Part shown: piece after piece, positions 1 to 34,851 of the stretch | How positions within the stretch are numbered: position 1 is the stretch's first letter | Layout of the letters: every line of letters begins with the position of its first letter | Assembly: GCA_026770705.1 (NCBI GenBank) | Contig: JANJGN010000150.1 | Coordinates: forward strand, 62,001 to 126,000 | Direction of reading: 5' to 3' | Length of the DNA stretch: 64,000 nt | DNA from: Isurus oxyrinchus | Taxonomy: Eukaryota | Made by a program: the position numbers and the translations under genes | The notes under the pieces: model-generated | Told to the model about the DNA's origin: nothing | What the model saw: the letters and a program-made list of their open reading frames with translations, nothing else | Database searches by the model: none

Positions 1-759
1 CATAGTGTCGCTGAGCAGGCCCTGCCCCCTGCTCGCCAACGGGAAAATTCAGCCCGATGACTCCATGCAACAGGACTGTACAGTGATTGAGGAGCGGGAA
101 TGGATCTGATTTCTTCTTGGTTAGGCCTCACCGCTGAGCCTTTGTGTGTAATGACTCCATAGGACCCTGGTCCTGAACAGAAACCTTGGAGATGAAGTCC
201 CGTCCTTTCACTGAGGATACCCTCCATTGTGTTGTGTGGCACTACCACCATGCTGGATGAGCAGGTTATTGTTGAGTCAATGCCTCTTAATGTCGATTAC
301 ACCTTTGTCACTTTGCTTATGATGAAGAGTAAATTAATAAGGTGGTGATTGGCCAGGTTGGAATTGTCCCGCTGGATTGGACATATCCCTGGGCAGTTTT
401 TCACATTGCAGGTTCAGCAGGCCCTCCCTTCGATGCGCTGTAAAGGACATTGTCCAAGAGCAGGCACAGTGGAGTGCTGAGAGTCACAGTCAAAATGTTG
501 TAGGTGATCTCAAATCCTTGTAAGCACTCGGCCAGCCAACAGCCTGAGATGGACACACATGTGGACAGTACTGACACCTGCCAATGGGCCCCTCATTTTC
601 TTACCTTGACAGGCTGTCCCCACTATTTCCCACTGCCAAGTTGTCGAAGAATATCGGATCACAAAGATTCCAGTATGATGCCCTGCCTGCCTTTAAAAAT
701 GACTCCCCGGGAGATGCCTTGCTCATCCCAATAAGATCAAGTTGAATCAGGAGATCCTT

Positions 760-3700
760 CAATGATGCTTCCTCAGTTTCCGTAGCGTAGAAGCTTTCAC
801 CGTTCCCTCTTGCAGCTGCTGGCATTTGTGTTGTGCTAAATGGACTAGATCAATTGACAGACTTGCATTGTCCAGCAGGTGTAATGTTGGAGCTCCTTTG
901 AAACTGCCAATATTGTTGAAACTTTCTGCATATTTCAATGTTATGTCATGAATTGAGGTGATGGGGTAGTATGTGAAACTGGGACAAACATAAATCCATT
1001 GGCTTTTGGCCAGATTGGATAATCCTGGCAGTGGGTGGGGCCAGAAAATCCCACCCCTATGGGACATTTTCAGTTTATTTGATGTGCTGAGAGAGATCAT
1101 TAAGGACAACAATCCACAATTTATTGGCAAGCCACGTCAGGATATGTGTGAGAGGTGGAATATCGATCACCGCTCCTCGTCTCACCGTGCACATCATCGC
1201 CATTTCCTGGTTTGTCTGTCACCACATGTATATGTTCCTGATGGGATAGTGGATGGTCATTCTTATTGCTTGAAGGTTCCCAGTTGTGTAGGGTCTGTTT
1301 GGATCAGCGCACGGCTCTTTGTAGCTGCATCAGCCTTTGCTCTAGTGCCATGCCGCTGTCAATGGCCCTTTCTGCCACAAGCCTTGCAGGATTGGTGGAA
1401 AGCTGGGCATTTCCTTGGTGCCTGCAGAAGGCCACACCTTCCACACGTCTCACTAGGTTTGGATGTTCTAGTGAGTGTGTCAACAATTGATGTTGTACTG
1501 AGGACCTGTAAGCTTCGTTGACCTGCGAGGATTACTTCGTATTTATGTCCATCCTTGAGTAGCTCTTCAATGCTATAGGTTTTGGACTTATCTAGCAGAT
1601 CTTTCTGGAAGGCTTCCATGGGAGTGGATGCGATCACCAACTCAACAACTCTGTCTGCAGGCTCTGTGTTTGAAATCACAGTGCGTACCCTTTTCTCTAC
1701 ATTGGCTGACAAAGTGGTCTATGGATTGTGTAGGCTGATGAAATGACATAAACTCTAGTTGATGAATATGGAGTTTCACCTGATTCTGAACCTGTCTTCC
1801 AAAGTCGTCCATATCTATTGGGGATCCTTTCACTCTTCTGCTGTTAATCCTGACGTGTTCAGCCTGTGTAGACCTTCATTCCCAATCACGAGGTGAATTT
1901 TTATGGCTTGCTCGTCTGGTTCAGTCACACCTGAATCAGGAAACCAGAGCTCTGTACGCTGTTTAAACATTCTGAATTCAGATAGTCGGTCAGCTCCATC
2001 CCAGTTCAAACTGGGGAATTTCGTGGACATTCTGACAATATTCCTTTGACCTTCCTTCTCCTACAGGACCTGGGATGAGTGTCGCTTTAGCCCCTTTCGT
2101 GCGCTTTTCCGAACCTCCGCCCACGAAGACGGGTTGTGGCAGGAACACACCACGGAGTAATGGAGTCTTTGTTTTTTATTCAATTTGCTGTTCAGCAATC
2201 TCGAAGCCGCCCGTTATAATCACTAACTTCTCTGGCCTGATTTTTATAATGGTTTTTGTGTGTTTGACTCTCCCTCGCTCACTATCGATCCAGCCCACAC
2301 CCTGGTCACTCGCCTTCCCTGACTGAGCTAACCCGCTGCTGGTCCTGGCGATACACACTGTCCCACTCACTGACCTACAGGCCGTGTGCTGTAATCTCAC
2401 CACGAGGGATCCTTCAGCTCCCCAGCTCTTTACTTGAGCTCTTTCCCGTCACTGTGTCTTCAAAGGTTTCCTGAGCAGTCAGTACACTGCGATTTCAACC
2501 CTCTCTGATGCTGTGTCTCTGTTGTGGTCTGACCAAAGCGTCGAGGATCGTCTCATGTCATGTAGCTCGATCTAAGGCTGTTCACCACATCATACCTGTA
2601 CTGAATCTTGCTGCCAGAATGTTTGGCCACCGCTGATCACCATGTTGTGTTTTTATAATGATATAAAGGCACCAGCCACTGATACGGAATTGGGTAAATA
2701 CATTGTGGGTTCAGTTATTTAGAACAGGGACATGAGAACAGATATACAAGGATAGAAAGCTGGGAGACACCTGCAGCCAAACTGTGTGAGCTGTGTTCTG
2801 CTCACAGACCAAAGTGAAACTTGGACTGGATGGTGTTATCATCCCAGCTGATGTTACTACTGGGCAAGTCAGATCCCAGGGTGGAACTCAGCTTGATAGG
2901 TCCTAACTTTTATTTTTTATTTAGGAATGTGGAGTGAGGCTACTGAACAGAGTCACAGAGTCATCTGATGAACTTCTAACAAAAGAATAAAACATTTATT
3001 AAACTAGGAAAGACAAACCATATTACATTAATCCTTCACCCAGACCTATACATTTACAGATTCATAAGTAGAACATAAGTTACAATAGCTATCTTATACT
3101 CTCATGTTCACACTAAGTACACAGTCGATGTAAACCAATAGACGACCTGGTGTCAGGGACACCACATTCTGAAAGAAACTGACAGAACCCACTTGGAACA
3201 AATTCTATGTCTCCCTCCTCATCTGTCCCCAGACGCTTGTTACACTGTGAGCCAACCAGTCTCACTGAACTGAGATATCCATATGAGGGTTTCCAATCCC
3301 CACTCTCCAAGAACTCACTTTGGAATCTTCTCCAACATGACACTTTCACTCAGACACCTTCCACAAGGGTCCACTTTCACTATTTCAAACTCTCCTTCCC
3401 ATGTTCCTGCCCCCTGGATCGCCACGTGCATTCAGCCTTCCTTCCACGCCCTGTCTCTCCAATGCTCAGCCGTGTCAATGGAACACCATGGCTTCACATG
3501 GCCGTAGTAATGAGTCACCAACCTGTGGTGTCTCCTAGGATCTTCTGGCTTCTCGCAAGCCTATTTTGCTTTAGGTCTGTGTCCTGCTGCTTTCTCCCTT
3601 TATGTTTGGAGCCTTCTTCTGCTCCTCACTCTTAACTTCACTTAACAGGGCTTTTTCCAGATTTGATAAGAACGTCTTCTTGGGCCCTTTCTCCTGTTCC

Positions 3701-4146
3701 ACTCGATAGTTTTGGCTTCATCTTTACTTTGGGACTGACTATCTGTCCCGCTCCTTTGCTGCTTCTCCTGGCAACTCCTTTCAACAGAACTGAAAGTACT
3801 TTTCTGTTTTTCTCGGTCTCTGTGTGTCCCTCCCTCTGGATCACTGTTGCTAGGCAACAGCACAGTTTCTTCTAACTTGTGTTTGTTTTGACTTCCCTTC
3901 AAGAGTTATAAAAACTCATTAGATAGGCGGCTTCTTCCAAAGTGAAACCAAAACTCAAGTTCCCCCTTTTCAAAACACCCAAATACAGAAATACAAACTA
4001 AACTTGAACTGAAAGATAGACCTTATGCCTAACGCACACAAATACACAGAGAACTTCCTTAAGCCAACCCCAGTTCTGAAAAATCACATGACGCACTTCC
4101 CCTCGAGTGATGTCATGCTGCTGTCCCTGAAAGGCATATTACAACA
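760..4146 (-). mobile_element. Degenerate Gypsy-type LTR retrotransposon (gag with zinc knuckle, pol fragment, PBS, interrupted 5' LTR)
   Basis: Minus-strand ORF pieces include CGRCG...CPAFHQSCKACGRKGH and a gag N-terminus. PBS-like TGGTGATCAGCGGTGG at 2642-2627 abuts the LTR end. LTR start TGTTGTAATATG at 4146; a second LTR-like insert lies at ~2852-4088. Confidence 0.7.
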
Positions 4147-4771
4147 GTGTTATCACTTGGCAGGTGATGTGACCCAGGCAGACCAAGTCCCTGAGAGAAA
4201 GGTGGTCACACGATCATAATGAATTTGCAATTTGTATTTATTATGAGATGTGTGCACTGAATTCAGAAGCAATAAGTCCACCAAGATCTTTAGAGATTTA
4301 AAAAAATAAATTAAAATATTTGTCACAAAAATAAAAGATTTCAAGCACATACATAAGACTACAATGACAGCTATAATAACTCCAAAAATTCCTAATTAAT
4401 CTGACTCCCAGTTACACTCCCTTTAAGGCAACAGACCAAAAATAGATTTTAGATTTAAAACAAACCCAGCAAGTTAACACAATGCCCTGGACAATGGAAT
4501 TCCAAATGGATTTTCCCCAACTTCAGTTCTGTTGGATAGCAGGCTTGTGCACAAACAGGGTCCTGAGGACCATCAGCCAATGTAGAATGAACTTGTCCAC
4601 TCCTGTTTCCAGGATTCTCTCCCATCCATTGTGATACCTTGGGGAGTTCCATGTGTGTCCTGTAGATGGTCCACACTGCAGCCACTGTGCCCCAGTGAAG
4701 GAGGGGGTGGATATCGAGTCTAGTGGATCGTCAAAACACACAGAGTTAAATATTGATATTTCTCTCCCCAG

Positions 4772-5149
4772 TTGGACTGTCACAAGATTGGAAAGGCAAC
4801 ACTCCACGAGAGGTGACAGCGCAGGAAGGTTCGTGTGTACAGATTCCATGTCATTACAGTTACTCATCACATTTGGTAAAGAAAACACATGTCGGAATCT
4901 GGTATATGAGGAGGTACATACAGAACAAATGGTCTAAATGGTCTATAGCCTTTCACTCCAAGGATCACAGTCACGAGTTACCACGGTTCCACCATCGGAC
5001 CCGGCTGTCTGGAGACCTGAAAGATGGTGACTGTTCCCTGATTATAAACAACATCACACGGGAAGATGCAGGACCTTATTTTTTCAGAATAGAATTTGAC
5101 AATGGTCCGAGCCATAACTATTACCCTGTAACCCAGCTTCACGTTTCTG
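4772..5149 (+). CDS. Gene A exon: Siglec-type V-set Ig domain (VGLSQDW...YFFRIEF...QLHVS)
   Basis: ccccag acceptor and gtaagt donor, phase 1-1. Siglec cysteine pattern EGSCVQIPC / DCSLII. F-strand essential Arg in YFFRIE (cf. CD33 YFFRME). Confidence 0.92.
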
Positions 5150-5876
5150 GTAAGTGCTGTGTTATAATTACTCAACAATTCACATCCAACACTCAATGGG
5201 AAATAACACAAACTGTGACGTTTACATATTAACACAAAACACAGCTTATTATAACACACTGACTGATTCTCAATATCCTGGTGATAGCTTCCAGTTCAGT
5301 CCTAAAGCAACATCTAATACTCACTTTAATATCATTGATTAAATGTATTGACTGTGTCCATCAATGTTATCAGGTTATCCACTCCCATCGATCTCTCTAA
5401 TCCTGTCTCGAAGTCTGACATAGCGACAGAAGAAAGATTCACATTTCTATAGCACCTTTCACCACCTCAGAACGTACCAAATCACTTCACAGCCAATGAG
5501 CTGATTCCTGAATTGTATTTACTGTTGTAATGTGAGAAACACAGCAGCCAATTTGCACAGAGCAATCTCCCACAAATTGCAAAGTAATAAATGGCCCAGA
5601 TCGCTGAGTGAATGATGGGGTAGTGCACTCCGAACTCTGGTCTGCTCCTCCACCCTCACCCACTATTATCAGTTCAAGTGTCTCGGAGTGAACATGTATT
5701 AAGCTGAGAGACAGAAACACCAAAGTCTCAAAGCAGGAAATTCTCTCCTGATCGTTGTAACCTCTCAGATCTGATATCATCCTGTAAAAGTGCTTTTTCT
5801 TGTGGGACTGTGGTTTCTATTTGAACTGATGCTTCACGTTATATTTCTCTAAAAGGATCCATTCTCTGTCTGTTAG

Positions 5877-6173
5877 ATTTCACAGATAAACCCACGATAT
5901 TCCCTGCTGAAATTATTGCAGGAAAGCCTGTGGATGTAAGCTGCACCTTCAACACAACGTGCAATGGAACAGCAGCACCTGTCTTAACCTGGGACTCTCC
6001 CACTGACGTACCTGGATCAGTCTCAAACACTGTAACTCAGCATGGTGTCACTCTGACCTATACTTCTGTTCTGACCCTGATCCCATCACTCAAACACCAC
6101 GGACACACTCTCAGCTGCAGAGTGAGATATCCATCTGTTTCATCGGAGCGGACCCTCGTACTAACTGTGCAAG
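5877..6173 (+). CDS. Gene A exon: first C2-set domain (DFTDKP...CTFNTTC...LSCRV...LTVQ)
   Basis: ttag/gtaagt, 297 nt, phase 1-1. The extra BC-loop Cys is typical of Siglec domain 2. Confidence 0.92.
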
Positions 6174-6349
6174 GTAAGTACCGATACCCTTCATTCTACA
6201 TTCGCTGGAATAGTATAAAATGTGCACAGCAAGCTCCCACACACTGCACTTTGTTTACCAACAGACCATTGGTCTTTAACTGGTAAAAAGTGACCCCTGA
6301 CAGGCAGTACATCCTTACTACTGACTCTCCGACAGTACATCATGGACTC

Positions 6350-7620
6350 ATAGACTCCTAGACAGAAGGAGGCCATTTAGTCCATCATGTCCATGCTGGT
6401 TCATTCTGTCCTTCAGAATTCTTACTAGTAACTTCCCCACCACCGAGGTTAGACTGACTGGCCTGTAATTTCCTGATCTATCCCTTCCTCCTTTTTTTAA
6501 TAATGGGACAACATCAGCCATCCTCCAGTCCTCTGGCACCTCACCTGTGGCCAGAGAGGATTTGAAAATTACTGCCAGGGCCCCTGATATCTCTTCCCTT
6601 TCCTCCCTCAACAGCTTTGGATTCATCTCATCCGGGCTTGTGGATTTATCCACTTTTCAGGCCGCTAAACCCACTAGTACCTCCTCTCTCTGTGTTAATT
6701 ACCTCTCATATTTCACAGTCCTCCACCCTGATGTTATACCTGCATCATCCTTTTCCATTGTGAAGACTGATGCAAAGTATTCATTGAGGACTGTACCCAC
6801 GTCTTCCAGGTCCACACACACATTACCTCGATGGTCCCTAATCAGCCCCACTCTTTCCCGAGTTATTCTCCTGCTCTTTACATATTTAAAAAACCCCTCT
6901 GGGTTTTGCTTTATTCTACTCACCAGTGCTTTCTCATGCACTCTCTTATCTTTCCTAATGTCCTTTTTCAGTTCCCCTCTGCACTATTTATACTCCTCTA
7001 GGGACTCTGCTGTATTGAGCCCTCAGTATCTGCCATAAGCTTCTTTTTTTTCTCAGTCCTAACCTTTATGTTCCTTGTCTTCCAGGGTTCTCCAGACTTG
7101 GTCTCCCTCTTTGTCTTTACAGGAAGATATCTGCTCTGTACTCTCGCTATTCCCTCCTTGAATGCCTCCCACTGCTCTGACACAGTTTTATCTGCAAAGA
7201 GCTTCTCCCAGTCCACTTGGGCCAAATCATATCTCATCTTAGTAAAATTAGCCTTTCCCCAGTTTAGAATTTTTATTCCCAGCACAAACTTATCCTTCTC
7301 CATAACTGTCCTAAATCCAATTGAGTTACAGTCACCATCTCCCCTACTGATACGCTTTCCAACTTCCCCGGCGCTTTTCCATATATTAGGTCCAGAACTG
7401 TCCCCTCCCTTGTTGAGCTTTCTATGCACAGACTAAAAATCTTCTCCTGGATGCAACTTCAGAATTTTTCTCCCTCCCTACCTTGCTCACTAAAGCTGTC
7501 CCAGTTAATATTTGGGTAGTTAAAATCCCTGAGTATTACTGCTTTATTATTCTTACACATCTCTGAAATGTGATCACATGTTGGATTGTCCATCTCTCCC
7601 TGACTGTTTGTTGGTTTTAT
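6350..7620 (-). mobile_element. CR1 LINE ORF2 fragment
   Basis: ORF fragments VPEDWRMADVVPLLKKGGRDRSGNYRPVSLTS and LNWGKANF. Confidence 0.85.
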
Positions 7621-7691
7621 ATCTTGAGTCTATGAGTTCACTGGTTGAGTAAACTCGAATTGCATTCCTTCATATACACTTGTTAGTTGAT

Positions 7692-7895
7692 AAAAACAAA
7701 AAAACTGCGGATGCTGGAAATCCAAAACAAAAACAGAATTACCTGGAAAAACTCAGCAGGTCTGGCAGCATCGGCGGAGAAGAAAAGTGTTGACGGTTCG
7801 AGTCCTCATGACCTCAGTTCTGTCGAAGGGTCATGAGGACTCGAAACATCAACTCTTTTCTTCTCCCCCGATGCTGCCAGACCTGTTGAGTTATT
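7692..7895. mobile_element. Penelope-type short element forming a ~64-bp-arm palindrome
   Basis: aactcagcaggtctggcagcatcgg...gacc pairs with ggtc...ccgatgctgccagacctgttgagtt. Related copies at 16113-16245 and 48815-48950. Confidence 0.6.
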
Positions 7896-8159
7896 CTTAG
7901 CTGATGCTCGCTATCAATAACCAAGAGACACCGACATTAGAACAAGCTGATTATTTATTGTAACAGAGGGCAGAGCACTAAATCCTTGCCTGCTCCCACA
8001 ACCACCTCCAGCTCCAGACTTACAGTTAACCAGTGGCCCACACTGTCCAGTGATTGGTCAGTACTGTCACATGGTTTATCCACTTGTATTCTCTTAAAGG
8101 TACCTGGCACTCCACATTATCACAGGAGGCCTATAGTACACACATAACAGCATGTTTGC

Positions 8160-8475
8160 CTCCTCAGCACTGACCCTTCTACAGTGCAGCACTCCCTCAT
8201 TACTGTCTCTCTAATAGTGTAATGATCCCTCAGTAGTGCTCCTCCAACATTGCACTGGTCAATCAGAACTGACGCTCTGACTGTGCAGTTTTATCTCAGC
8301 AGTAACCCTCCTACAGTGCAGCGCTCCCACAGTACTGTCCCTCCTACAGTGCAGCACTCCCTCAGGACTGACCCTCTGACAGTGCAGCACTCCCTCAGTA
8401 CTGAACCTCTGGCAGTGCAGCACTCCCTCAATACTGACCCTCTGACAGTGCAGCACGCCCTCAATACTGAACTGA
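8160..8475 (+). repeat. 33-bp minisatellite (ctccctcagtactgaccctctgacagtgcagca)n
   Basis: Tandem units; gives spurious HSLSTDPLTVQ ORFs. Confidence 0.9.
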
Positions 8476-8602
8476 AGTGTCTGCCTGGATTACGGGCTAT
8501 GTGGTGAAAGAACCTACATTGACATCACACCTTTCACATTCTCAGTGTCTTTCAAAGTGCTTCACAGTCAGTGTAAGTTAACTGATCTGTATTTGTTTTT
8601 AG

Positions 8603-8884
8603 ACGCACCACGGAATCTCTCAATTACTTATCTTGATATGATTAACGCTTCATCGATCAATATAATTGAGGGGAATTCTGCAGTGATAATCTGCTCTGTC
8701 GAGAGCTTCCCAGCTTCTAACCTGACGTGGCGACATCTTAATGTCCCAATGAACAGAACAAGTTCCAACAATGAGCTGTGGTTGGTGATTCCTCACGTTA
8801 CATCCAGGGATACTGGAGAATATCAGTGTGTGGCAGAGAATGAACATGGAGCAGTGGAGGGGTTCCTAACCATTACTGTGGAAT
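8603..8884 (+). CDS. Gene A exon: second C2/I-type Ig domain (DAPRNLS...CSVESFPASNLTW...YQCVAENEHG)
   Basis: ttttag/gtgagt, 282 nt, phase 1-1; canonical C-W-YxC Ig motif. Confidence 0.92.
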
Positions 8885-10588
8885 GTGAGTTACACAGACT
8901 TTAATATTTCTCTCATCTCCGAACACATATACTCAGATGCTCTCCCACACACACACACACAAGCACTCACAAATGTACAGACCCAAAGTGCATGCACACA
9001 CACAATCCCACACTCATGAGCACACAGAAAGACACACTCACACACAAACACATTAGTACACACTTCCCTGTGAGTTACCTGACCTCCCCAGTACTGCACT
9101 GGAGAGTTCTCCTGGATTCTGGGATATGTGTTCCCATTCATATTTATCGAAGAATATCCAAATTACGAAGTCTATTCCAGAAACTCACATGCACAAAGAT
9201 TCCAACTGATACTCCCCACCTCTCCATGTATCTCTCTCCTCCTTTAAGAAGCTTCCTAATCCCTAACTCTTGCCTGTCCTAACTCCTCCTTATAATGCCC
9301 TGTGTCAAATTTTTTGTGTATCTGAGAGAAAGGGAGAAATAAGGAAGTTTAGGAAGGGATTTCCTGTTAGTGAAGAGCTTACTTCATTTTCTCACCTTTC
9401 CAGTGTTCAGTTTTGCCATCATGTCCAATGACCCTGTTTATAATGGGGGCATCCTATGTAAACGTCACACTGTCTTTACGTCCTCCCACCAGTGGTGGCA
9501 CTGTGGTGCTTAAGCTTGCACCTCCCTGCTTTTCAGCCAACTTCACTTCACAATTTGCTACACATGCTGTAAGTTCATCGAAATTAACTTATATATCAAA
9601 CAGTAGATTTGATAATACAGTTTATAGAAAGGTTCATCCACGCTCTGGGAAGGGTTTACACTCTCCAGGAAGCAGGAATAGGCTGGATGTTGGGGAGTTC
9701 ATCTTTTCCCAGAGAGTAGGGATCCTCGGGAATGTGCTGTCAGTGGGTGTGGTGGTTGCTGTCTCTCTGTTGCCTTCAAGAGGGATCTGGAGTGGTTACT
9801 AACTGGGGGAGAGATCATGGAAGTGGAGAATGATACAGCACAGGAGGAGGCCATTCAGCCCATTGTGCCTGTGCCAGATCTTTCAATGTTCTATCCAATC
9901 AGATCCACTAACCACCACTCCACTTTGCCGCCATCTTCTTCCTTCAAGTGTTTATCCAATTTCCCTTTTGAAAGTTCCTGTTGAATCTGCTTCCACCGCC
10001 CTTTCAGGCAGAACCTTCCAGATCACAACAACTCGCTCTGTCAAAACAAATTCTCCTCATCTCCCCCTCCGGTTCGTCAATCTGTGTCCCTCTGGTTACC
10101 GACCCTCCTGCCCCTTAAATACATCGATACTGTTCACCTCAACCACTCCCAGTGGGAGCGAGTTCCACATTCTCCCCTCTCTCTGGGTAAAGATTGGAAC
10201 TGTTTATTAAGCGGGGGGTGTAAGTCCGTGAGGAAGTCCATCTCGATCCTGTCCGATTCGCACACGCATCCGAGATGGATTTCCACCCTGCACTAAACGT
10301 TTCCAGAATTTTCTACAGCACAGTCCTGTACACAGCGATGGAGAGAAACATTGGACAGGGAGTCCAACAGCACAATGATCCATTCTCACCAATGTTCCAC
10401 GCTAAGGGGAAAGTTCCGATTGTCCACTCTTAGAGTGTTTACAATGAAAACATTCATTCCACATTGAATCCCAGTGGATGGGTCAATATTACAGCAAATG
10501 TTGCAGTGATATGAAGCTTGATTGTTCAGCCAGAGTGAGAGATTGAAAGCGGAGAGTCAGTGATGATTTCTTTCTGTGTGTTCTCTAG

Positions 10589-10728
10589 ACAGTGGAGGAG
10601 AGATTCTGCATGTGATCCTGATCCTGGGAATACGAGCTGTGATATTCCTTGTGGCTGTGGTTATCACTATCGCTGGAGTCTGTGTCTGGGAGAGACAAAC
10701 AGTGAAAGGAAGTCGACAGACTGTTTAA
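10589..10728 (+). CDS. Gene A terminal exon: TM with Arg plus short tail (YSGGEILHVILILGIRAVIFLVAVVITIAGVCVWERQTVKGSRQTV*), activating-type
   Basis: Pyrimidine tract plus ctctag acceptor, in phase 1 with the preceding exon. Hydrophobic helix with CGA (Arg) at 10633-10635. TAA stop and no tyrosine motifs in the tail. Confidence 0.82.
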
Positions 10729-10744
10729 AGATTTGGACAGCAAC

Positions 10745-11360
10745 AATCTCATCATGGAACAGAAGAACGGCATTTGGCCCATCTACTCCATGCTGTCTCT
10801 CTGTAAAGCAATCCAGTCAGTCCCATTCCCCCGTTCTATCCCCGTATCCCTTCAAGTTTATTTCTCCTCAAGTGTCCATCCAATTTCCTTTTGAAATCGT
10901 TCATTGTCTCCGCTTCCACCATCCTCGTAGGCAGCGAGTTCCAGCTCATTACCACTCGCTGTGTAAAAAAGTTCCTCCTCACATCCCCCTCTGCCCAAAA
11001 CCTTCAATCTGTGTCCCCCAGTCCTTGTACCATCAGCTAATGGCAACAGCTTCTCTTTGTCTACCTGATCTAAACCCATCATCATCTTGTACACCTCGAT
11101 CAGATCCCCCCTCAATCTCCTTTGCTCCAAGGAGAACAACCCCAGCTTCTCCAACCCAACCTTGTCGCTAAAATCCCTCATCCCTGGACCCATTCTGCTC
11201 AATCTCCTCCCCACCCTCTCAAGGACTCTCACTTCCTTCCCAAAGTGAGGAGACCAGAACTGGACACAATACTCTAGTTGTGACCGAACCAGAGCTTTAT
11301 AAATGTTCAGCATAACCTCCCTGTGTTTGTACTCAATCCCTCGATTTATGAAAAGCTTAT
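10745..11360 (-). mobile_element. CR1 LINE 3' end inserted just after the gene A stop codon
   Basis: LVRSQLEYCVQFWSPH...LEQRRLRGDLIEVYK. Confidence 0.85.
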
Positions 11361-11773
11361 TCTTTCCATCAGCACAAACAGCAATTTCCAAGCGGACTCC
11401 CATCAGCAGACAGAGTGCAATGAAACATCGGCATGCCTGCTTCTTAATGTACGGAGAGAAACCTGGAACGAGAGATTGTCCTTCTTCTCCTCAGCAAGCT
11501 GAAACTTTTCCTTATACCTGGTGCTCCCCAGTCCTGCTGTGTGGACACATCATAACCACGGCATTGTCTGGCTGTGTGCAGCCAACATGGTCGAATAGGA
11601 ATGAACAGAAATGTGACGTTGCTAAACTCTGTTCTCTGATTGGAATGTGCTTTCTGAATGCTGCACCTTTTTCATGCTGCGATAGATTGTAAGAAGCATT
11701 TGGGTTATGAATAAAATTACATTGATTAACACAAGTGATTAAAATGCTCAGCCTGTTCTGTAAATATTTATAG

Positions 11774-11779
11774 ATTAAA
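11774..11779 (+). terminator. Putative poly(A) signal ATTAAA of gene A (equivalents at 39060-39065 for C and 61322-61327 for D)
   Basis: Positionally conserved in three homologous 3' UTR blocks. Confidence 0.4.
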
Positions 11780-12069
11780 ATTCTTATTTTGCTGCCAAAT
11801 TCTTGCCTCAAAGAAAAGCTTCTTGTTGTCACATTTTCTCTATTATATAAATTCCTGTGCCCATCCTTATTATAGAAACTTCCAATGTAAACATGTCACA
11901 TTGTAGTTGCACACTCCTGCCAGTGGTGGTGCCATTCCAAAGCTGTCTTGCTGCACAGACACAGTGAGAAATATTCTCGACGTGTACATGATGTTGTTGT
12001 TACACGGACATCAGGCGGAATCTTGGGCAGTGCCTAGAATGCACTTAGGGCAGTGCAGACCACACTCAG

Positions 12070-13560
12070 AACTGACAGTGCAGCGTTTCCTCAGTGCTGA
12101 CCCTCCGTCAGTTCAGCGCTCCCTCATTACTGTCCCTCTGACAGTGCTGCACTACCTCATTATTGACCCTTTTCAAGTGCTTCACCCCGTCATCATTGAC
12201 CTTCTGACCGTGCAGGATTCCCTCATGGCTGACAATCTGACAGTGCAACACTCCCTGAATACTGACCCTCTGATACTGTACCCCTCCATCACTAATGACT
12301 TTCCGACAGTTCAGCACTCCCTAGGTACAGACACTCTGACAGGGCAGCATTCCCTCAGTATTCAAACTCCCACTATGCAGCTGTCCCTCAGGATTCTCCC
12401 CCCCACAGTGCAACACTCCCTCAGTACTCTCACTCCCACAGTGCAGCACTCCCTCAGTACTCACCCTCCCACAGTGCAGCACTCCCTCAGTACTCACCCT
12501 CCCACAGTGCAGCACTCCCTCAGTACTCACCCTCCCACAGTGCAGCACATCCTCAGTACTCACCCTCCCACAGTGCTGTGCGAGTTGTTTAAATCAAGAC
12601 TGATGCCCAAAGAGGGAGGTTTCAATGCTAAATCATTGAAATCGGAGAACATTATTTTTAGGCTGAGGGGAACTAGACTTAGTTCCTCAAATCCTTTCTT
12701 TAGCAATAACACACAGTACTAGAATCTCTGTTTAAATAAATTCCAGTTAAACTTTGCCATGAAAGGATATCTTCTCACACTCCTCTCTACCTCAGTAGTA
12801 ACCCTCCCACAGTCCGGCACCCCCTCAATACTGACCCTCTGACTGTGCAAATCTCACTCAGTACAGACCCTCCGACAGTGCAGCACTCCCACATTACTGA
12901 CCCTCTGACAGTGCATCACTCCCTCATTAAGGACCCTCTTCCAGTGCAACACTCCCACATTACTGTCCCTCTGACAGTGCAGCACTGCCACATTACTGAC
13001 CCTCTGACAGTGCAGCACTCCTACATTACTGTCCCTCTGACAGTGCAGCACTCCCTCAGTACTGATCCTCCGACATTGCAGCATTCCTTCACTACTGGCC
13101 CTCTGACAGTGCAGCACTCCCACATTACTGACCCTCTGATAGTGCAGCAGACCCTCAGTACTGACCCCACTAACAGTGCAGCACTCGCTCAGTACTGACC
13201 CTCCCACAGTGCAGCACTCCCTCAGTACTATACTCCTGACAGTGAAGCACTCCCTTATTAATGACCCTCTTCCAGTGCAGAACTCCCACATTACTGACCC
13301 TCTGACAATGCAGCACTCCCACATTACTGACACACTGACAGTGCAGCACTCCCACATTACTGTCCCTCTGACAGTGCAGCACTCCCTCAGTACTGACCCT
13401 CCGACATTGCAGCAATCCTTCACTACTGGCCCTCTGACAGTGCAGCAATCCCACATTACTGACCTTCTGATAGTGCAGCACTCACTCAGTACTGACCCTC
13501 ACACAGTGCAGCACTCCCTCAGTACTATACCCCAGACAGTGCAGCACTCCTTCAGTAATG
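12070..13560 (+). repeat. 33-bp minisatellite, two arrays (12070-12578, 12790-13560)
   Basis: Tandem units. Confidence 0.92.
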
Positions 13561-13779
13561 ATATCAGGGATTGTCAACATGTATCATACGGCCAGAGACC
13601 TGTATTGGGAACTCTATCGCCTGCGCTTCAGCCTCTGAGGTGAGGGGGAGGGGTCTAATCCCACGGAGCCAATGGAGAAGCTTGATGACTACAGCTGCCC
13701 AAATATGAGCTGACAGATCATCACATGGTAAACGTTTTGCTGAGAGCACAAAACATCCTCAATCTTCTCACTGATTACC

Positions 13780-14370: not shown

Positions 14371-14410
14371 ATGATCGGGAAATCTTACTTCCTCCTGTCA
14401 CTTCTCCAAG
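14371..14410 (+). CDS. Gene B leader exon, coding part (MIGKSYFLLSLLQ; exon 14329-14410)
   Basis: ATG at 14371 and phase-1 donor gtaata. Spliced to the V exon it gives the signal peptide MIGKSYFLLSLLQVGLS|QEW. Confidence 0.85.
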
Positions 14411-15272
14411 GTAATATCATCGTCAGCTCAGACAGATTTATGGTGAATAGTCTTTGTAAAAGATCATTCTTATTGAGCTGTGATTGGGAACTGATTCAGC
14501 AGTGAGCCAGTGTACAAACTCACACCAAGTCCCATTCACCCATCACCCCTAAACTATCTGACTCCTGGTCCTACAACATCTCAAACTTAAGATTCACATC
14601 TCTTTGTTCAAATGCATCCATTGCCTCACACTGCCTCCTTATCTCTGTAACCTCCTGCAACTCTCCCAACCAACGTCCCAGATCTCTGTGTTACTCCAAT
14701 TCCGGCCTCTTGACCATCCCCCGATTCCCATCACTCCAATACTGGCGGCCGGGCCTTCAGCTGCCTGGGGCCTGAGCTCTGGAATTCACTCCCTAAACCT
14801 CGGCGATGGAGGAGATCAGAGGGTTTCATTTTACTGAAAACCACCACGACTACATCACAGCTGCAGTGAGAATAGACAGAGAGTCCAGCCCTCGCACTTC
14901 CTGCACAGTTTCACCATAGCAACCATAATAAGGAAGTAAAATAACTGAAAGTTAAACCGAAGACAAACCAGTCAGTTTAGAGAGATGAGATGTTTACACA
15001 GTTTCCCTGTGTGTCTTGTAAACACTGTGTTGGGTGGAAGACTGGCTTCACTAAACAGGGTCCTGAGGACCATGAGCCAATGTAGAATGAAGTTGTCCAC
15101 TCCTGTGTCCAGGATTCTCTTCCATCCATTATGAAACCCCTGGGGAGTTCCATGTGTGTCCTGTAGATGGTCCACACTGCAGCCAATGTGCCCCAGTGAT
15201 GGAGGGGGTGGATATCGAGTCTAGTGGATCTACAAACCATCCAGAGTTAAATATTGATATTTCTCTCCCCAG

Positions 15273-17116: not shown

Positions 17117-17269
17117 GACATCTGAATGTCCAAATGAACAGAACAAGTTCCAACAATGAGCTGTGGTTGGTGATTCCTCACATTACCTCCAGGGACACTG
17201 GAGACTATCAGTGTGTGGCAGAGAATGAACATGGAGCAGTGGATGGGTTCATAACCATCACTGTGGAAC
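17117..17269 (+). pseudogene. Gene B second C2 exon remnant (3' 153 nt only; acceptor and first ~129 nt replaced)
   Basis: Matches 8732-8884. Upstream 16930-17116 is unrelated sequence, and the B-strand Cys and C-strand Trp are missing. Confidence 0.85.
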
Positions 17270-19709
17270 GTGAGTTACACAGACTTCAACATCTCTCTCA
17301 GATTCGAACACTACACAAACACCATCGAACATACACACCTAAATAGACACGTGCAGACACACATATATGACCACACACAAAGACACACTCACACACAAAC
17401 ACTAACACTCACTCCCTCATGGGTTACCTGACCTCCCTCACTACTGCACTGGAGAGTTAGCCTGAATTCTGGGATTTGTGTTCCCATTCATATTTATGGA
17501 AGAATATGGAAATTACTATTACAGACACTCAGATGCTTAGAGGCTCTCACAGATACTCTCTGCGTCTCCAACTCTCTCTCTCCCTTTAAGAAGCTTCCTG
17601 AAACCTAACCCTTTGACGAATCACCAACCCAACTCCTCCTTATCTGATTCTGTGTGATTTTCTTTGTGTATCTGAGAGTAAGAGAGAGTTGGAGAGGTTT
17701 AGGAAGAGAATTCCTGCTGGTGAAAAGCTTACATAATGTTCTCACTATTTCCGTGCACATAATTCCCAGTATGTCCAAAGCCCCTGTTTATAATGATGAC
17801 TGCCTATGTAAACGTCACGCTGTAGTTACAGCCTCTCACCAGTGGTGGCATTGTAGCCCTTAATCCTTGTGTTTCCCAGCTTTCCCAGCAACTCTACTTC
17901 CCAGTTTGCTACACAAGCTGTGAGTTCTTCGGAATTCAATTATTTCTCAAACGGTAGATTTGATGTCATTTTATTGAAAACTTCCTCAGCGCCTCCCTGA
18001 AGGGTTTACACTCTCTGGGAAGCAGGAATAGGCTGGATGTTGGGGAGTTCATCTTTTCCCAGAGAGTAGTGATCCTCGGGAATGTGCTGTCAGTGGGTGT
18101 GGTGGTTGCTGTTTCTCTGTCACCTTCAAGAGGGATCTGGAGTGGTTACTGACTGGGGGAGAGATCATGGAAGCGGAGAATGATACAGCACAGGAGGAGG
18201 CCATTCAGCCCATTGAGCCTGTGCCAGGTCTTTCAATGTTCTATCCCATCAGATCCACTAACCACCACTACACTTTGCCCCCATCTTCCTCCTTCAAGTG
18301 TTTATCCAATTTCCCTTTTGAAAGTTCTTATTGGATCTGCTTCCACCGCCCTTTCAGGCAGCACCTTCCAGATCACAACAACTCGCTCTGTCAAAACAAA
18401 TTCCCCATCCAGTTCGTCAATCTGTGTCCCTCTGGTTACCGACCCTCATGCCCCTTAAATACATCGATACTGTTCACCTCAACCACTCCCTGTGGGAGCG
18501 AGTTCCACATTCTCCCCTCTCTCTGGGTAAAGATTGGAACTGTTTAGTAAGCGGGGGGTGTAAGTCCGTGGGGGAGTCCATCTCAATCCTGCCCGATTGA
18601 GCCAGTGAGCCAGTGTACAAACTCACACCAAGTCCCATTCACCCATCACCCCTGTGCTTACTGATACACACTGACCTCCTGTCTGACAGCAGAATTGGAG
18701 GAGAGCAGAGATCTCAGAGGTTTTTAGGGTTGGAGGAGGTTACAGTGATAGAGAGTGTAGAGGGGGGATGGTGGGGTAAGAAATCAATGATGAGAATTTG
18801 AAATTTGAGTCATTGCTGGACTGAGAGTTAGTGTAGGTCAGCCAGTGACAGGGCAGCGATCGGCTGAATAGAAAATCAGGGATAAAAACTGGGGGATGAG
18901 GTCTATCCTGATGTGAGGTCTCCGATAGCAATGACCTGAAATTTGTGTCCTTTGCTGCCTTTATTCAAAATCGCCCATGAAGACAACACAGCAGCTCCTA
19001 GAATAGACAGGCTGTTCAGTGTCACACTTCCTGTCCATTCTCACCTTGCTAGATACTTCAATAAGGGAGCAAGATAACTGAAAGAGAGAAGGGAGGCAAA
19101 GCTGTCTGTGTGTAAAACTGTCAAATATTCTGAGTTATCATGATTGTCTCTGACCTGCTGCAGAGTTTAAATTTCACAGAATCTGAGCACTTTGCAGCTC
19201 AGAGAGAGACCATTGACTCACTGCCTGAAAGGGCGGTGGAAGCAGATTCAACAGGAACTTTCAGAAGGGGAACTGGATAAATACTTGAAGGGGACATTTT
19301 GCAGGGCTGTGGAGGAGAGAGCAGAGGTGAGAGTGGGACTAATTGGACAGATCTTTCAAAAGCCCAGCACAGGCTCGATGGGCCAAATGGCTTCCTTTTG
19401 TTCCCGATCATTCTACAATCTGATAAATTAAGACCCACATCAATAACTCTTAAGGCTCCAGCTGCAGGGATGGATCTTTGAGAAGGACAGGGAACAAGAG
19501 GTTTCTGGTATCATTTTCAATTTTATTGACAATTACATAACAGTATAGATTTGTTGAATATTTGAGTGTCTAAAGAGTAGAGGTAATCTGCACTTACGCC
19601 CAGATCTTGTGTTGGTAACCTTGTCTGGAGGTGTCTTTAAATGCTCACAGTGATCTGTGGGATTGTCATTCTTGGATGTTGTCCCTGGTTTCAATTGGCA
19701 TTTTGCCCT

Positions 19710-22520: not shown

Positions 22521-22669
22521 GGGCTGAATTTCCTGCCTGTCGGGGGGGTGGGTCTGAATATTTAAATGAGGCAGGATGATGTCGGGGGTTCCTCCTGATG
22601 TCATCCCGCATCATCATAGTGTCGCTGAGCAGGCCCCACCCCCTGCTCGCCAACGGGAAAATTCAGCCC
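22521..22669. mobile_element. Short MITE with terminal inverted repeats GGGCTGAATTT...AAATTCAGCCC (3' part also at 1-55)
   Basis: Inverted termini; inserted in the CR1 3' tail. Confidence 0.6.
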
Positions 22670-23369
22670 GATGACTCCATGCAACAGGACTGTAAGGTGA
22701 TTGAGGAGCGGGAATGGATCTGATTTCTCCTTGGTTAGGCCTCACCGCTGAGCCTTTGTGTGTAATAACTCCATAGGACCCTGGTCCTGAACAGAAACCT
22801 TGGAGATGAAGTCCCGTCCTTTCACTGAGGATACCCTCCATTGTGTTGTGTGGCACTACCACCATGCTGGATGAGCAGGTTATTGTTGAGTCAATGCCTC
22901 TTAATGTCGATTACACCTTTATCACTTTGCTTATGATGAAGAGTAAATTGATAAGGTAGTGATTGTCCAGGTTGGATTTCTCCTGCTGGATTGGACATAT
23001 CCCTGGGCAGTTTTTCACATTGCAGGTTCAGCAGGCCCTCCCTTTGATGCGCTGTAAAGGACATTGTCCAAGAGCAGGCACAGTGGAGTGCTGAGAGTCA
23101 CAGTCAAAATGTTGTAAGTGATCTCAAAGCCTTGTAAGGACTCTGCCAGCCAACAGCCTGAGATGGACACACATGTGGACAGTACTGACACCTGCCAATG
23201 AGCCCCTCATTTTCTAACCGTGACAGGCTGTCCCCACCATTTCCCACTGCCAAGTTGTTGAAGAATATCCGATCACAAAGATTCCAGTATGATGCCCTGC
23301 CTGTCTTTAGAAATGACTCCCCGGGAGATGCCTTGCTCATCCCAATAAGGTCAAGTTGAATCAGGAGAT

Positions 23370-26300: not shown

Positions 26301-26759
26301 TTTCTCCTGTTCCACTCGATGGTTTTCGCTTCATCTTTACTTTGGGACTGACTATCTGTCCCGCTCCTTTGCTGCTTCTCCTGGCAACTCCTTTCAACAG
26401 AACTGAAAGTACTTTTCTGTTTTTCTCGGTCTCTGTGTGTCCCTCCCTCTGGATCACTGTTACTAGGCAACAGCACAGTTTATTCTACCTTGTGTTTGTT
26501 TTGACTTCCCTTCAAGAGTCATAAAAACTCATTAGATAGGTGGCTTCTTCCAAAGTGAAACCAAAACTCAAGTTCCCCCTTTTCAAAACACCCAAATACA
26601 GAAAGACAAACTAAACTTGAATTGAAAGATATACCTTATGCCTAATGCACACAAATAGACAGAGAGCTTCCTTAAGCCAACCCTAGTTCCGAAAAATCAC
26701 ATGACACACTTCCCCTCGAGTGATGTCATGCTGCTGTCCCTGAAAGGCATATTACAACA
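23370..26759 (-). mobile_element. Second copy of the same degenerate Gypsy element (part of a segmental duplication)
   Basis: Colinear and closely similar to 760-4146. Confidence 0.7.
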
Positions 26760-27385
26760 GTGTTATCACTTGGCAGGTGATGTGTGCCAGGCAGACCAAG
26801 TCCATGAGAGAAATGTGGTCACACGATCATAATGATTCTTGATTTTTTTATTTATTATGAGATGTGTGCACTGAATTCAGAAGCAATAAGTCCACCAAGA
26901 TCTTTAGAGATTTAAAAAAATAAATTAAAATATTTATCATCAAAATAAAAGATTTTAAGCACAGACGTAAGACTACAATGACTGCTATAATAACTCCTAA
27001 AATTCCTAATTAACCTGACTCCCAGTTACACTCCCTTTAAGGCAACAGACCAAAAATAGATGTTAGATTTGAAACAAACTCAGCAAGTTAACACAATGCC
27101 CTGGACAATGGAATTCCAAATGGATTTTCCCCAACTTCAGTTCTGTTGGATAGCAGGCTTGTGCACAAACAGGGTCCTGAGGACCATGAGCCAATGTAGA
27201 ATGAACTTGTCCACTCCTGTTTCCAGGATTCACTTCCATCTATTGTGATACCTTGGGGAGTTCATTGTGTGTCCTGTAGCTGGTCCACACTGCAGCCACT
27301 GTGCCCCAGTGAAGGAGGGGGTGGATATCGAGTCTAGTGGATTGACAAAACACACAGAGTAAAATATTGATATTTCTCTCCCCAG

Positions 27386-34754: not shown

Positions 34755-34851
34755 GTAGAGACTCCAGTAAATGGACAGTAGGATTGTACACGGCTGGGAT
34801 CATGTTGAGTGTTTTCCTGGCTGGAATCTTCATCTTCATCTGTGTGAGAAA
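34755..34851 (+). CDS. Gene C TM exon (RDSSKWTVGLYTAGIMLSVFLAGIFIFICVRK), uncharged TM
   Basis: ttttacag/gtaagt, phase 1-2; near-identical paralogue at 56842-56938. Confidence 0.88.

What the first reader, a model, noticed from the sequence alone, without database searches (positions are those of the whole stretch)
10589..10728. Hidden activating exon: Arg-bearing TM with a ~12-aa tail, absent from the ORF track
Seen: a phase-1 acceptor gives YSGGEILHVILILGIRAVIFLVAVVITIAGVCVWERQTVKGSRQTV*, with a lone Arg inside the hydrophobic helix. It is unrelated to the TM exon of C and D, yet it is followed by a 3' region homologous to theirs. Established: a TM Arg or Lys recruits ITAM adaptors (Siglec-14 Arg with DAP12; LILRA/OSCAR Arg with FcRgamma). 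Inference: gene A is an activating receptor.
Basis: partly seen in the sequence, partly recalled or inferred. Interest (0 to 1): 0.8.

Follow-up and report, generated by a model that had tools for sequence, protein, structure and literature searches.

The report
Shark Siglec-like receptor arginine membrane exon
This is a real, spliced last exon that gives a shark sialic-acid-receptor-like gene a membrane anchor with a buried arginine and a 12-residue tail, the usual build of an activating immune receptor.

Summary

The exon is used. Spliced RNA contigs join 6173 to 10589 (GT..AG) in 4 of 4 runs laid. That skips the C2b exon.

The peptide matches the C-terminus of automatic shark protein models from 7 species in two orders (best E 7e-14). 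The Arg is invariant in 11 of 11. Against a carpet-shark homologue the module is better conserved (83%) than the Ig domains (53-71%).

The same module ends Siglec-like, CD22-like and SLAM-like models. Neighbouring genes C and D carry an uncharged membrane exon and a tyrosine-motif tail, so the locus looks like a paired activating/inhibitory cluster.

Adaptor pairing is inferred, not shown. No leader exon lies in the 4.77 kb upstream of gene A. This scan reached the same reading earlier on other pieces of this genome. My library searches found no paper describing it. I file it as a new member of a known kind, of moderate interest.

The parts
4772..5149 (+). Gene A V-set exon (Siglec-type, with the F-strand Arg in YFFRIE). 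Phase 1 at both ends.
   Evidence: Open frame with AG|TT acceptor and G|GTAAGT donor. Pfam V-set E 4.3e-13 and Ig_CD22 E 1.3e-09. Best solved relatives are MAG (8.8e-12), sialoadhesin and Siglec-5, with the Arg and Cys pattern aligned to MAG.
5877..6173 (+). Gene A C2-set exon 'C2a'. Its donor at 6173|GT is the one seen joined to the TM exon.
   Evidence: Pfam C2-set_2 E 2.2e-08. Splice sites read. Joints 6173->10589 in 4 of 4 runs and 6173->8603 in 1 of 4 runs.
8603..8884 (+). Gene A Ig exon 'C2b' (stalk type), open and with canonical sites. Its inclusion before the TM exon is not shown.
   Evidence: Pfam Ig_3 E 1.3e-12 and I-set E 2e-10. AG|AC acceptor and T|GTGAGT donor. Joint 6173->8603 in run X1 only. 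At the 90% likeness threshold this joint could come from a paralogue.
10589..10728 (+). Coding part of the terminal exon: short stalk, TM helix with R15, 12-residue tail, TAA stop.
   Evidence: sequence. (acceptor used in 4 of 4 runs). (homologues, invariant Arg).
10729..11735 (+). Inferred 3' UTR of the terminal exon. AATAAA at 11710 and ATTAAA at 11738 are candidate polyadenylation signals.
   Evidence: RNA contigs run from 10587 through 10734, and others cover 11368-11500 and beyond. Signals listed. The 3' end itself is not shown.
10747..11367 (.). About 620 bp present in the window but absent from RNA contigs of organism B. Probably a repeat or retroelement insertion in the 3' UTR of this copy.
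   Evidence: Joint 10734->11368 with 12 letters between, in X5 and X7. The 12 letters resemble 10735-10746 as read. A minus-strand ORF at 10861-11490 looks like a reverse-transcriptase fragment (that label is my own recall, no family search was run). Weak repeat matches elsewhere in the window.
11518..11932 (+). Block homologous to the region just 3' of the terminal tyrosine-motif exons of genes C and D.
   Evidence: blastn: 11518-11932 vs 38802-39222 at 74.7%, 11570-11735 vs 59041-59209 at 79.3%. Alignments. z 19 against shuffles.
34784..34846 (+). Hydrophobic core of gene C's uncharged TM exon (bounds of the scan window, not exon bounds).
   Evidence: Hydrophobicity scan.
56865..56933 (+). 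Hydrophobic core of gene D's uncharged TM exon (bounds of the scan window, not exon bounds).
   Evidence: Hydrophobicity scan.
37817..38062 (+). Gene C tail exon. It has TEYAQI; the proximal motif reads LLYANP, which is not canonical.
   Evidence: tblastn, motif scan.
58767..59012 (+). Gene D tail exon with LLYANI (ITIM pattern) and TEYTQI (ITSM pattern).

Best explanation
10589-10728 is the coding part of the last exon of a shark Siglec-like receptor gene. It is spliced in phase 1 onto an upstream Ig exon. In the RNA contigs seen, that exon is C2a, giving a V-C2-TM protein. The exon supplies a type I membrane anchor whose conserved face carries one arginine, followed by a 12-residue tail with no tyrosine (shown).

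By the established rule for modular immune receptors, a membrane-buried basic residue docks onto the paired aspartates of a disulfide-linked signalling dimer of the DAP12, DAP10, FcRgamma or zeta type. On that rule the receptor would reach the surface and signal only together with such an adaptor, and would act as the activating counterpart of the linked ITIM/ITSM-bearing genes C and D (inferred).

The module is not a mutated copy of the inhibitory genes' TM exon. It is an unrelated cassette exon that also terminates CD22-like, single-V and SLAM-like receptor models in other sharks (shown for predicted proteins). The homology further downstream to the 3' flank of the inhibitory genes suggests that the cassette replaced the TM-plus-tail exons of an inhibitory-type ancestor (inferred).
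For: - Sequence and canonical splice sites.
- Spliced joint 6173->10589, GT..AG, one contig in each of 4 of 4 runs from 4 studies and two organism labels.
- phmmer against 1.84 billion representatives: 10 hits at E<=1e-3. Nine carry the module, and in 8 of those 9 it is the extreme C-terminus.
- Two further Scyliorhinus canicula models of 272 and 273 aa have exactly the V-C2-TM build.
- The junction residue Asp predicted for 6173|10589 is the one found in P0001 and P0012.
- Arg is invariant in 11 of 11 homologues.
- Invariant columns are L6 I11 L12 G13 I14 R15 A16 I18 F19 V23 G29 C31 V32 in the window plus 10 homologues. They include the i-4, i+4, i+8 stripe around R15, as expected of a helix-packing face.
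- Against Chiloscyllium punctatum P0003 the module is 82.9% identical, versus V 52.8%, C2a 71.4% and C2b 67.7%.
- Charges follow the positive-inside rule (E4 outside; R35, K39, R42 inside; read).
- No Tyr in the tail.
- Genes C and D have an uncharged TM plus LLYANI/TEYTQI-type tails.
- General rule of basic-acidic TM assembly: PMC13107469, sections 2.2.1 and 2.4.1 and passages read. Paired Siglec-5/-14 paradigm: PMC13358205, passages read.
Against: - No adaptor association, surface expression or signalling was tested.
- The runs are labelled 'RNA?' by guess. X1 also holds unspliced or intronic pieces, and contigs were laid at 90% likeness.
- The exon-covering contigs printed for X5, X6 and X7 (organism B) differ at 4 of 148 letters and lack 10747-11367, so they may come from a paralogue or another species rather than from this copy.
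- The 8884->10589 junction was not among the joints shown.
- No leader exon in 1-4771.
- Akula et al. 2014 found no FcRgamma homologue in sharks.
- I found no source on DAP12 or DAP10 in sharks.
- The homologues are automatic gene models, not characterised proteins.
Confidence: 0.7

Rival explanations
1. The exon is real, but this particular copy is not a stand-alone activating gene. Gene A has lost its own leader and is either the 3' half of a fusion with the gene upstream of the window (leader-V-C2...-V-C2-(C2)-TM) or a silent remnant. On this view the RNA contigs come from intact paralogues elsewhere in the genome.
For: - No leader-like exon in 1-4771. The family leader (MIGKSYFLLSLLQ type, as in P0012 and P0013) is found only near 14371 and 43415.
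- 1-4771 is a 95.9% copy of 22615-27385, the long stretch that separates the TM-less gene B remnant from the next V exon.
- Gene A's intron-3 homology to gene B stops at 10258/18598, and 18595-18653 matches the intron just after a leader exon.
- The contigs printed for X5, X6 and X7 differ at 4 of 148 letters and lack 10747-11367.
- First-reader notes place the same fusion junction about 4 kb before the window start (s1-864303).
Against: - All four gene A exons are open with canonical phase-1 sites.
- Run X1 holds near-identical pieces of this very locus (10288-10597 with 1 difference in 310) together with the spliced joint.
- A fusion would still end in this exon and still be an Arg-TM receptor.
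Confidence: 0.3
2. The receptor is membrane-bound but does not signal: a decoy or adhesion form. The arginine would serve another purpose, for instance ER retention and quality control, pairing with a non-ITAM partner, or snorkelling near the outer leaflet.
For: - Within the core conserved in all families (ILGIRA onward, 23 residues in P0009) the Arg sits near the outer end, at position 5.
- Siglec-1 is cited as lacking a signalling domain (PMC13358205).
- No FcRgamma was found in sharks in 2014.
Against: - Invariance of the Arg and of a helical face around it across three receptor families and two shark orders.
- The module is more conserved than the ectodomains. This argues for a specific protein partner in the membrane.
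- An Arg near the top of the TM is exactly how CD89 binds FcRgamma (PMC13107469 section 2.2.1).
Confidence: 0.15
3. Chance open frame: a hydrophobic stretch behind an AG that is not an exon.
For: The ORF is only 50 aa and lies under a longer ORF in another frame.
Against: Spliced contigs in 4 of 4 runs. Database matches with E down to 7e-14 at the C-terminus of shark receptor models.
Confidence: 0.01

Closest known systems
Human Siglec-14 / Siglec-16 (activating partners of Siglec-5 / Siglec-11)
   Same: Siglec-type V-set head. Short tail without ITIM. Basic residue in the TM. Linked ITIM-bearing relatives with similar ectodomains in the same cluster. (Paradigm read in PMC13358205; window features.)
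   Different: The shark V domains are only 76-83% identical between neighbours, not near-identical as described for Siglec-5/-14. The TM module is an unrelated cassette rather than a diverged copy of the inhibitory TM. Orthology to the mammalian CD33-related group is not shown. The best solved relatives of the V domain are MAG and sialoadhesin. The adaptor is unknown.
Siglec-15 (activating Siglec conserved from fish to mammals)
   Same: A Siglec with a basic TM residue that couples to DAP12/DAP10, present outside mammals (PMC7226832, passages read).
   Different: Siglec-15 uses a Lys and is a single conserved gene. Here an Arg cassette sits in a multi-copy, rapidly varying cluster next to ITIM genes. 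The window's V domain matches Siglec-15 more weakly (E 4.6e-06) than MAG (8.8e-12).
FcalphaRI (CD89) and macaque activating KIR: Arg-TM receptors coupled to FcRgamma
   Same: An arginine towards the outer end of the TM as the docking residue (PMC13107469 section 2.2.1; PMC8102735, search listing and start of abstract only).
   Different: Different Ig families. FcRgamma was reported missing from sharks in 2014. In the Siglec-like copies a longer hydrophobic lead-in places R15 at residue 11 of 29, which is more central.
Automatic RefSeq models in sharks, e.g. S. canicula 'sialic acid-binding Ig-like lectin 13' and '14 isoform X2', S. torazame 'CD33-like'
   Same: Same V-C2-TM(Arg) build and same leader type. 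C2a is 86-90% identical and the module 82-84% identical to the window.
   Different: Other species or paralogues. Tails differ in length: they end at ERRTV in S. canicula, at TVKGS in carpet sharks, and run 12 residues here. None is experimentally characterised as far as my searches show.

Membership tests
Siglec (sialic-acid-binding Ig-like lectin) | N-terminal V-set domain of the Siglec/CD22 type | tested here: met
   Pfam V-set E 4.3e-13 and Ig_CD22 E 1.3e-09. The top 17 solved-structure matches are all Siglecs: MAG, sialoadhesin, Siglec-5, CD33, Siglec-8, -10 and -7.
Siglec (sialic-acid-binding Ig-like lectin) | Conserved F-strand arginine that binds the sialic-acid carboxylate | tested here: met
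   YFFRI in the window aligns with YYFRG of MAG in the phmmer alignment. That this MAG Arg is the essential one is recalled.
Siglec (sialic-acid-binding Ig-like lectin) | Siglec-type cysteine pattern in the V-set domain, followed by C2-set domain(s) | tested here: met
   The Cys of SCVQIPC and DCSL align with those of MAG. The next exon is C2-set_2, E 2.2e-08. The role of these Cys in disulfides is recalled.
Siglec (sialic-acid-binding Ig-like lectin) | Binding of sialylated glycans | not testable with these tools
   Needs a recombinant ectodomain and glycan binding assays.
Activating member of a paired immune receptor family (adaptor-coupled) | Basic residue inside the transmembrane helix | tested here: met
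   R15 within I5-W33. Invariant in 11 of 11 homologues.
Activating member of a paired immune receptor family (adaptor-coupled) | Short cytoplasmic tail without ITIM, ITSM or ITAM | tested here: met
   12 residues, 0 Tyr. Homologue tails run 5-12 residues past the conserved Trp/Cys, none with Tyr.
Activating member of a paired immune receptor family (adaptor-coupled) | Closely related, linked inhibitory counterpart with ITIM | tested here: met
   Genes C and D in the same window. V is 76-80% and C2a 84-86% identical to gene A. They have an uncharged TM. LLYANI and TEYTQI are present in D, TEYAQI in C.
Activating member of a paired immune receptor family (adaptor-coupled) | Physical, Arg-dependent association with an Asp-bearing signalling dimer | not testable with these tools
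   Needs co-immunoprecipitation or surface-rescue experiments. No ITAM-like frame was found in the window itself.
Activating member of a paired immune receptor family (adaptor-coupled) | A suitable adaptor exists in the species | not tested
   I had no permitted query sequence for an adaptor. PMC4016189 reports no FcRgamma in sharks. No paper on shark DAP12/DAP10 was found.
CD33-related Siglec subgroup | Phylogenetic grouping with mammalian CD33-related Siglecs | not tested
   No tree was built. MAG and sialoadhesin score above Siglec-5 and CD33. PMC7226832 states that fish genomes lack CD33-related Siglecs, and the word 'shark' does not occur in that paper.

The most novel reading that the evidence does not exclude
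Sharks may build activating receptors not by mutating an inhibitory gene's own membrane segment, as is described for KIR and Ly49 in mammals, but by grafting one shared Arg-TM cassette exon onto unrelated Ig-superfamily genes. Siglec-like, CD22-like multi-Ig, single-V and SLAM-like genes all carry it. All of these receptors would then plug into one dedicated adaptor. That adaptor could be a shark-specific or so far unrecognised one, given the reported absence of FcRgamma.
Probability: 0.35. Interest if true: 0.6.

Novelty: new member of a known kind. Interest (0 to 1): 0.4.

Why it matters
Published surveys read here say that fish have only four conserved Siglecs and lack CD33-related, paired Siglecs (PMC7226832). 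A 2025 review of vertebrate sialoglycan-binding proteins does not mention sharks at all (PMC13358205).

A tandem shark cluster with Siglec-type heads, ITIM/ITSM tails on some genes and a conserved Arg-TM cassette on others would push the paired activating/inhibitory Siglec logic back to cartilaginous fish, or show that it arose there independently. It also offers a compact 45-residue bait for finding the adaptor that shark innate receptors use.

The practical value is modest. The build is familiar, it is already present unremarked in automatic annotation, and this scan has met it before.

Tried and rejected
- Copies of the exon elsewhere in the window: none by blastn (E<=1e-3) or by tblastn beyond chance-level scraps.
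- Derivation of the exon from the TM or tyrosine-motif exons of C and D: rejected, since local alignments score no better than shuffles.
- A leader exon for gene A: an ATG/hydrophobic/phase-1 donor scan, tblastn with the P0003 N-terminus and blastn with gene B's leader region all found none in 1-4771.
- An adaptor gene in the window: an ITAM-pattern scan of six frames found nothing.
- Pfam on the 45-residue module and on the D tail exon: no family.
- Literature: searches found no paper on shark activating Siglecs or on shark DAP12/DAP10. PMC4536121 does not mention sharks. Supplementary files were not opened and might hold gene lists that bear on this.
Exons were handled one by one.
- No structure prediction, atlas search or Rfam search was run. 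I judged them not to bear on the question.

Full report
**What the window is.** The window is vertebrate DNA with 45% G+C, many interspersed repeats and five N runs. On its + strand it carries a tandem cluster of Ig-superfamily exons.
- Six V-set exons lie near 4772, 15273, 27386, 31414, 47050 and 49084.
- Four C2-set 'C2a' exons and eight full or partial 'C2b' stalk exons follow. Six of the C2b exons stand in a row at 50.5-56.0 kb.
- There are two uncharged TM cores (34784-34846 and 56865-56933) and two tail exons (37817-38062 and 58767-59012).

The V exon of gene A hits Pfam V-set and Ig_CD22. Among solved structures it matches MAG, sialoadhesin, Siglec-5 and CD33 best, with the F-strand Arg (YFFRI) aligned to that of MAG. 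The tail exon of gene D holds LLYANI and TEYTQI. That of gene C holds TEYAQI. The closest database proteins are automatic models from sharks, so the genome is a shark's, as earlier notes of this scan also say.

**The observation.** A polypyrimidine tract and AG at 10587-88 precede the exon start at 10589. AC completes a split codon. The frame then gives SGGEILHVILILGIRAVIFLVAVVITIAGVCVWERQTVKGSRQTV and TAA at 10726-28.

The 19-residue hydrophobicity maximum is 2.95. The stretch I5-W33 holds one Arg (R15) and one His (H7). The flanking charges (E4 outside; R35, K39, R42 inside) fit a type I orientation. The tail has 12 residues and no Tyr. The start-to-stop ORF in this frame is only 50 aa and is overlapped by a 203-aa ORF in another frame, so an ORF list would indeed hide it.

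**Is it an exon?** One search for runs and one laying of contigs were allowed. I laid four runs from four studies (X1 of organism A; X5, X6 and X7 of organism B) on 5700-11500 at 90% likeness.
- In 4 of 4 runs one contig joins 6171->10587. The tool notes that the cut fits equally 2 places to the right, that is 6173|10589 with GT..AG ends.
- Contig pieces covering 10587-10734 are listed for X5, X6 and X7.

The acceptor at 10589 is therefore used. However, the partner seen is the C2a donor at 6173, which skips C2b. This junction is in frame (G|AC gives Asp).

A 6173->8603 joint (C2a to C2b) appears in X1 only.

Several caveats apply. The runs are 'RNA?' by guess. X1 also holds near-identical unspliced pieces (10288-10597, 1 difference in 310). 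The X5, X6 and X7 contigs differ from the window at 4 of 148 letters. In X5 and X7 they continue from 10734 to 11368 with 12 letters between. Those 12 letters resemble 10735-10746, so about 620 bp (10747-11367) of the window are missing from those transcripts. I read this as a repeat insertion in this copy's 3' UTR, or as evidence that those contigs come from a paralogue or sister species.

**Relatives.** phmmer of the 45 residues against 1.84 billion representatives gave 10 proteins at E<=1e-3. One of them (P0008) is a low-complexity repeat protein matching residues 22-39 only. The other nine carry the module.
- In eight of the nine it is the very C-terminus.
- In P0010 it is internal, in what looks like a run-on model.

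A word-based search with P0001's module examined 5 candidates and returned 3: P0001 itself and two S. canicula models of 272 and 273 aa. These have the leader MIGKSYFLLSLLQ, V, C2a and the module, which is the two-Ig form that the RNA joint predicts. P0001 and P0012 even show the predicted Asp at the junction.

The source names are CD33-like and Siglec 11/12/13/14. The models come from Scyliorhinus torazame, S. canicula, Chiloscyllium punctatum and C. plagiosum.

The same module also ends proteins of other architectures:
- 'B-cell receptor CD22-like' multi-Ig models (P0004 and P0005; 8 and 4 Ig_2 stretches, no Siglec V-set);
- a 171-aa single-V whale-shark model (P0006);
- two SLAM-like models (P0007 and P0009; the name 'SLAM family member 9-like' comes from the source).

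That makes seven species. I looked up three of them and they fall in Carcharhiniformes and Orectolobiformes. The orders of the other four are recalled.

**Conservation.** The motif ILGIRA, and with it the Arg, is present in 11 of 11 homologues. An alignment of the window with 10 of them left out P0010, P0008 and the unexamined cluster mate P0011. It gives the invariant columns L6 I11 L12 G13 I14 R15 A16 I18 F19 V23 G29 C31 V32. I11, R15, F19 and V23 are spaced by four residues, so one helical face is conserved.

Exon by exon against P0003 of a carpet shark, identity is V 52.8%, C2a 71.4%, C2b 67.7% and module 82.9%. Against the whale-shark single-V protein the V domain is 29% identical but the module 74%. 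A mere anchor would not be the best conserved part of a fast-evolving receptor. This is the main argument that the helix has a specific partner.

**Relation to the inhibitory neighbours.** The module has no detectable DNA similarity to the TM or tail exons of C and D (z 0.3-1.1) and no other copy in the window. Downstream, 11518-11932 aligns with 38802-39222 (74.7%) and 11570-11735 with 59041-59209 (79.3%). AATAAA at 11710 lies inside this block.

I infer that an inhibitory-type ancestor lost its TM and tail exons to the cassette and kept its 3' flank. A general model in which activating receptors arise from inhibitory ones is in PMC2213150, of which I saw the search listing and the start of the abstract only.

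**Is gene A complete?** Its four exons are open with canonical phase-1 sites. No leader exon is found in 1-4771, whereas family leaders lie near 14371 (gene B) and 43415 (gene D).

The stretch 1-4771 is a 95.9% copy of 22615-27385. Gene B's homology to gene A's intron 3 stops at 18598, which corresponds to 10258. The next bases (18595-18653) match the intron behind a leader exon. Together with s1-864303, it suggests that the same junction lies about 4 kb before this window.

Gene A may therefore be read from an upstream leader as a longer fusion that still ends in the Arg-TM exon. I could not see that DNA, so this stays an inference.

**Mechanism.** The following is established knowledge, from a review I read in part (PMC13107469).
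- A basic TM residue is the docking site for the aspartate pair of a dimeric signalling module.
- Correct placement of that residue can suffice for assembly and surface expression.
- DAP12 partners carry a central lysine.
- NKG2D uses a central arginine for DAP10.
- CD89 uses an arginine near the top of its TM for FcRgamma.

In the window R15 is residue 11 of the 29-residue hydrophobic run. In the SLAM-like homologues, however, the hydrophobic run starts at ILGIRA, which puts the Arg at position 5. The geometry therefore does not single out one adaptor. A top-of-helix Arg leans towards a gamma/zeta-type partner, yet FcRgamma was reported absent from sharks in 2014. I commit to 'Arg-dependent assembly with an Asp-bearing ITAM or YxxM dimer, giving an activating counterpart to genes C and D'. 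The identity of the adaptor stays open.

**Novelty.** The build is the classical paired-receptor build, and it already sits in RefSeq models of related sharks. This scan has reported the same exon type on other pieces of this genome (s1-871670, s1-868598, s1-871938). I found no paper describing it. Fish Siglec surveys that I read in passages speak of four conserved Siglecs only.

The one less ordinary point is that a single cassette serves several receptor families.

Noticed in passing
window 17367-18653: Gene B (leader near 14371, V 15273, C2a 16445, half a C2b at 17119-17286) has no TM exon. Its homology to gene A's intron 3 ends at 18598 (= 10258 in A). 18595-18653 matches the intron just behind a leader exon (14493-14550, 96.6%). 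This is consistent with a deletion that removed B's Arg-TM exon and the next gene's leader.
   Followed up: partly
window 1-4771 and 22615-27385: A 4.77-kb segmental duplicate at 95.9% identity ends exactly at two V exons. Those V exons are themselves only 78% identical at the protein level, so the V exon has diverged far more than its upstream flank.
   Followed up: partly
window 50508-56033: Six tandem copies of the C2b stalk exon in gene D, 82-94% identical in protein to gene A's single copy. They are separated by CA-rich simple sequence and two N runs.
   Followed up: no
window 12036-13561, 8160-8470, 37050-37690, 50240-50505, 57900-58480: A 33-bp-period minisatellite, read as SLSTDPLTVQH-like repeats in one frame, recurs in introns and flanks of genes A, C and D. 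The C (37 kb) and D (58 kb) copies are in the opposite orientation to the one after gene A.
   Followed up: no
window 37817-38062: Gene C's tail exon has LLYANP where gene D has the ITIM pattern LLYANI. C may have lost the proximal ITIM while keeping TEYAQI.
   Followed up: no
P0004, P0005, P0006, P0007, P0009 (other sharks): The same Arg-TM module terminates CD22-like multi-Ig, single-V and SLAM-like predicted proteins. This suggests one cassette shared by several receptor families.
   Followed up: partly
window 994-2060 and 23600-24700 (minus strand): ORFs with a CCHC zinc-knuckle-like motif (gag-like retroelement by my recall; no family search was run) lie in the long stretch upstream of the V exons at 4772 and 27386.
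   Followed up: no
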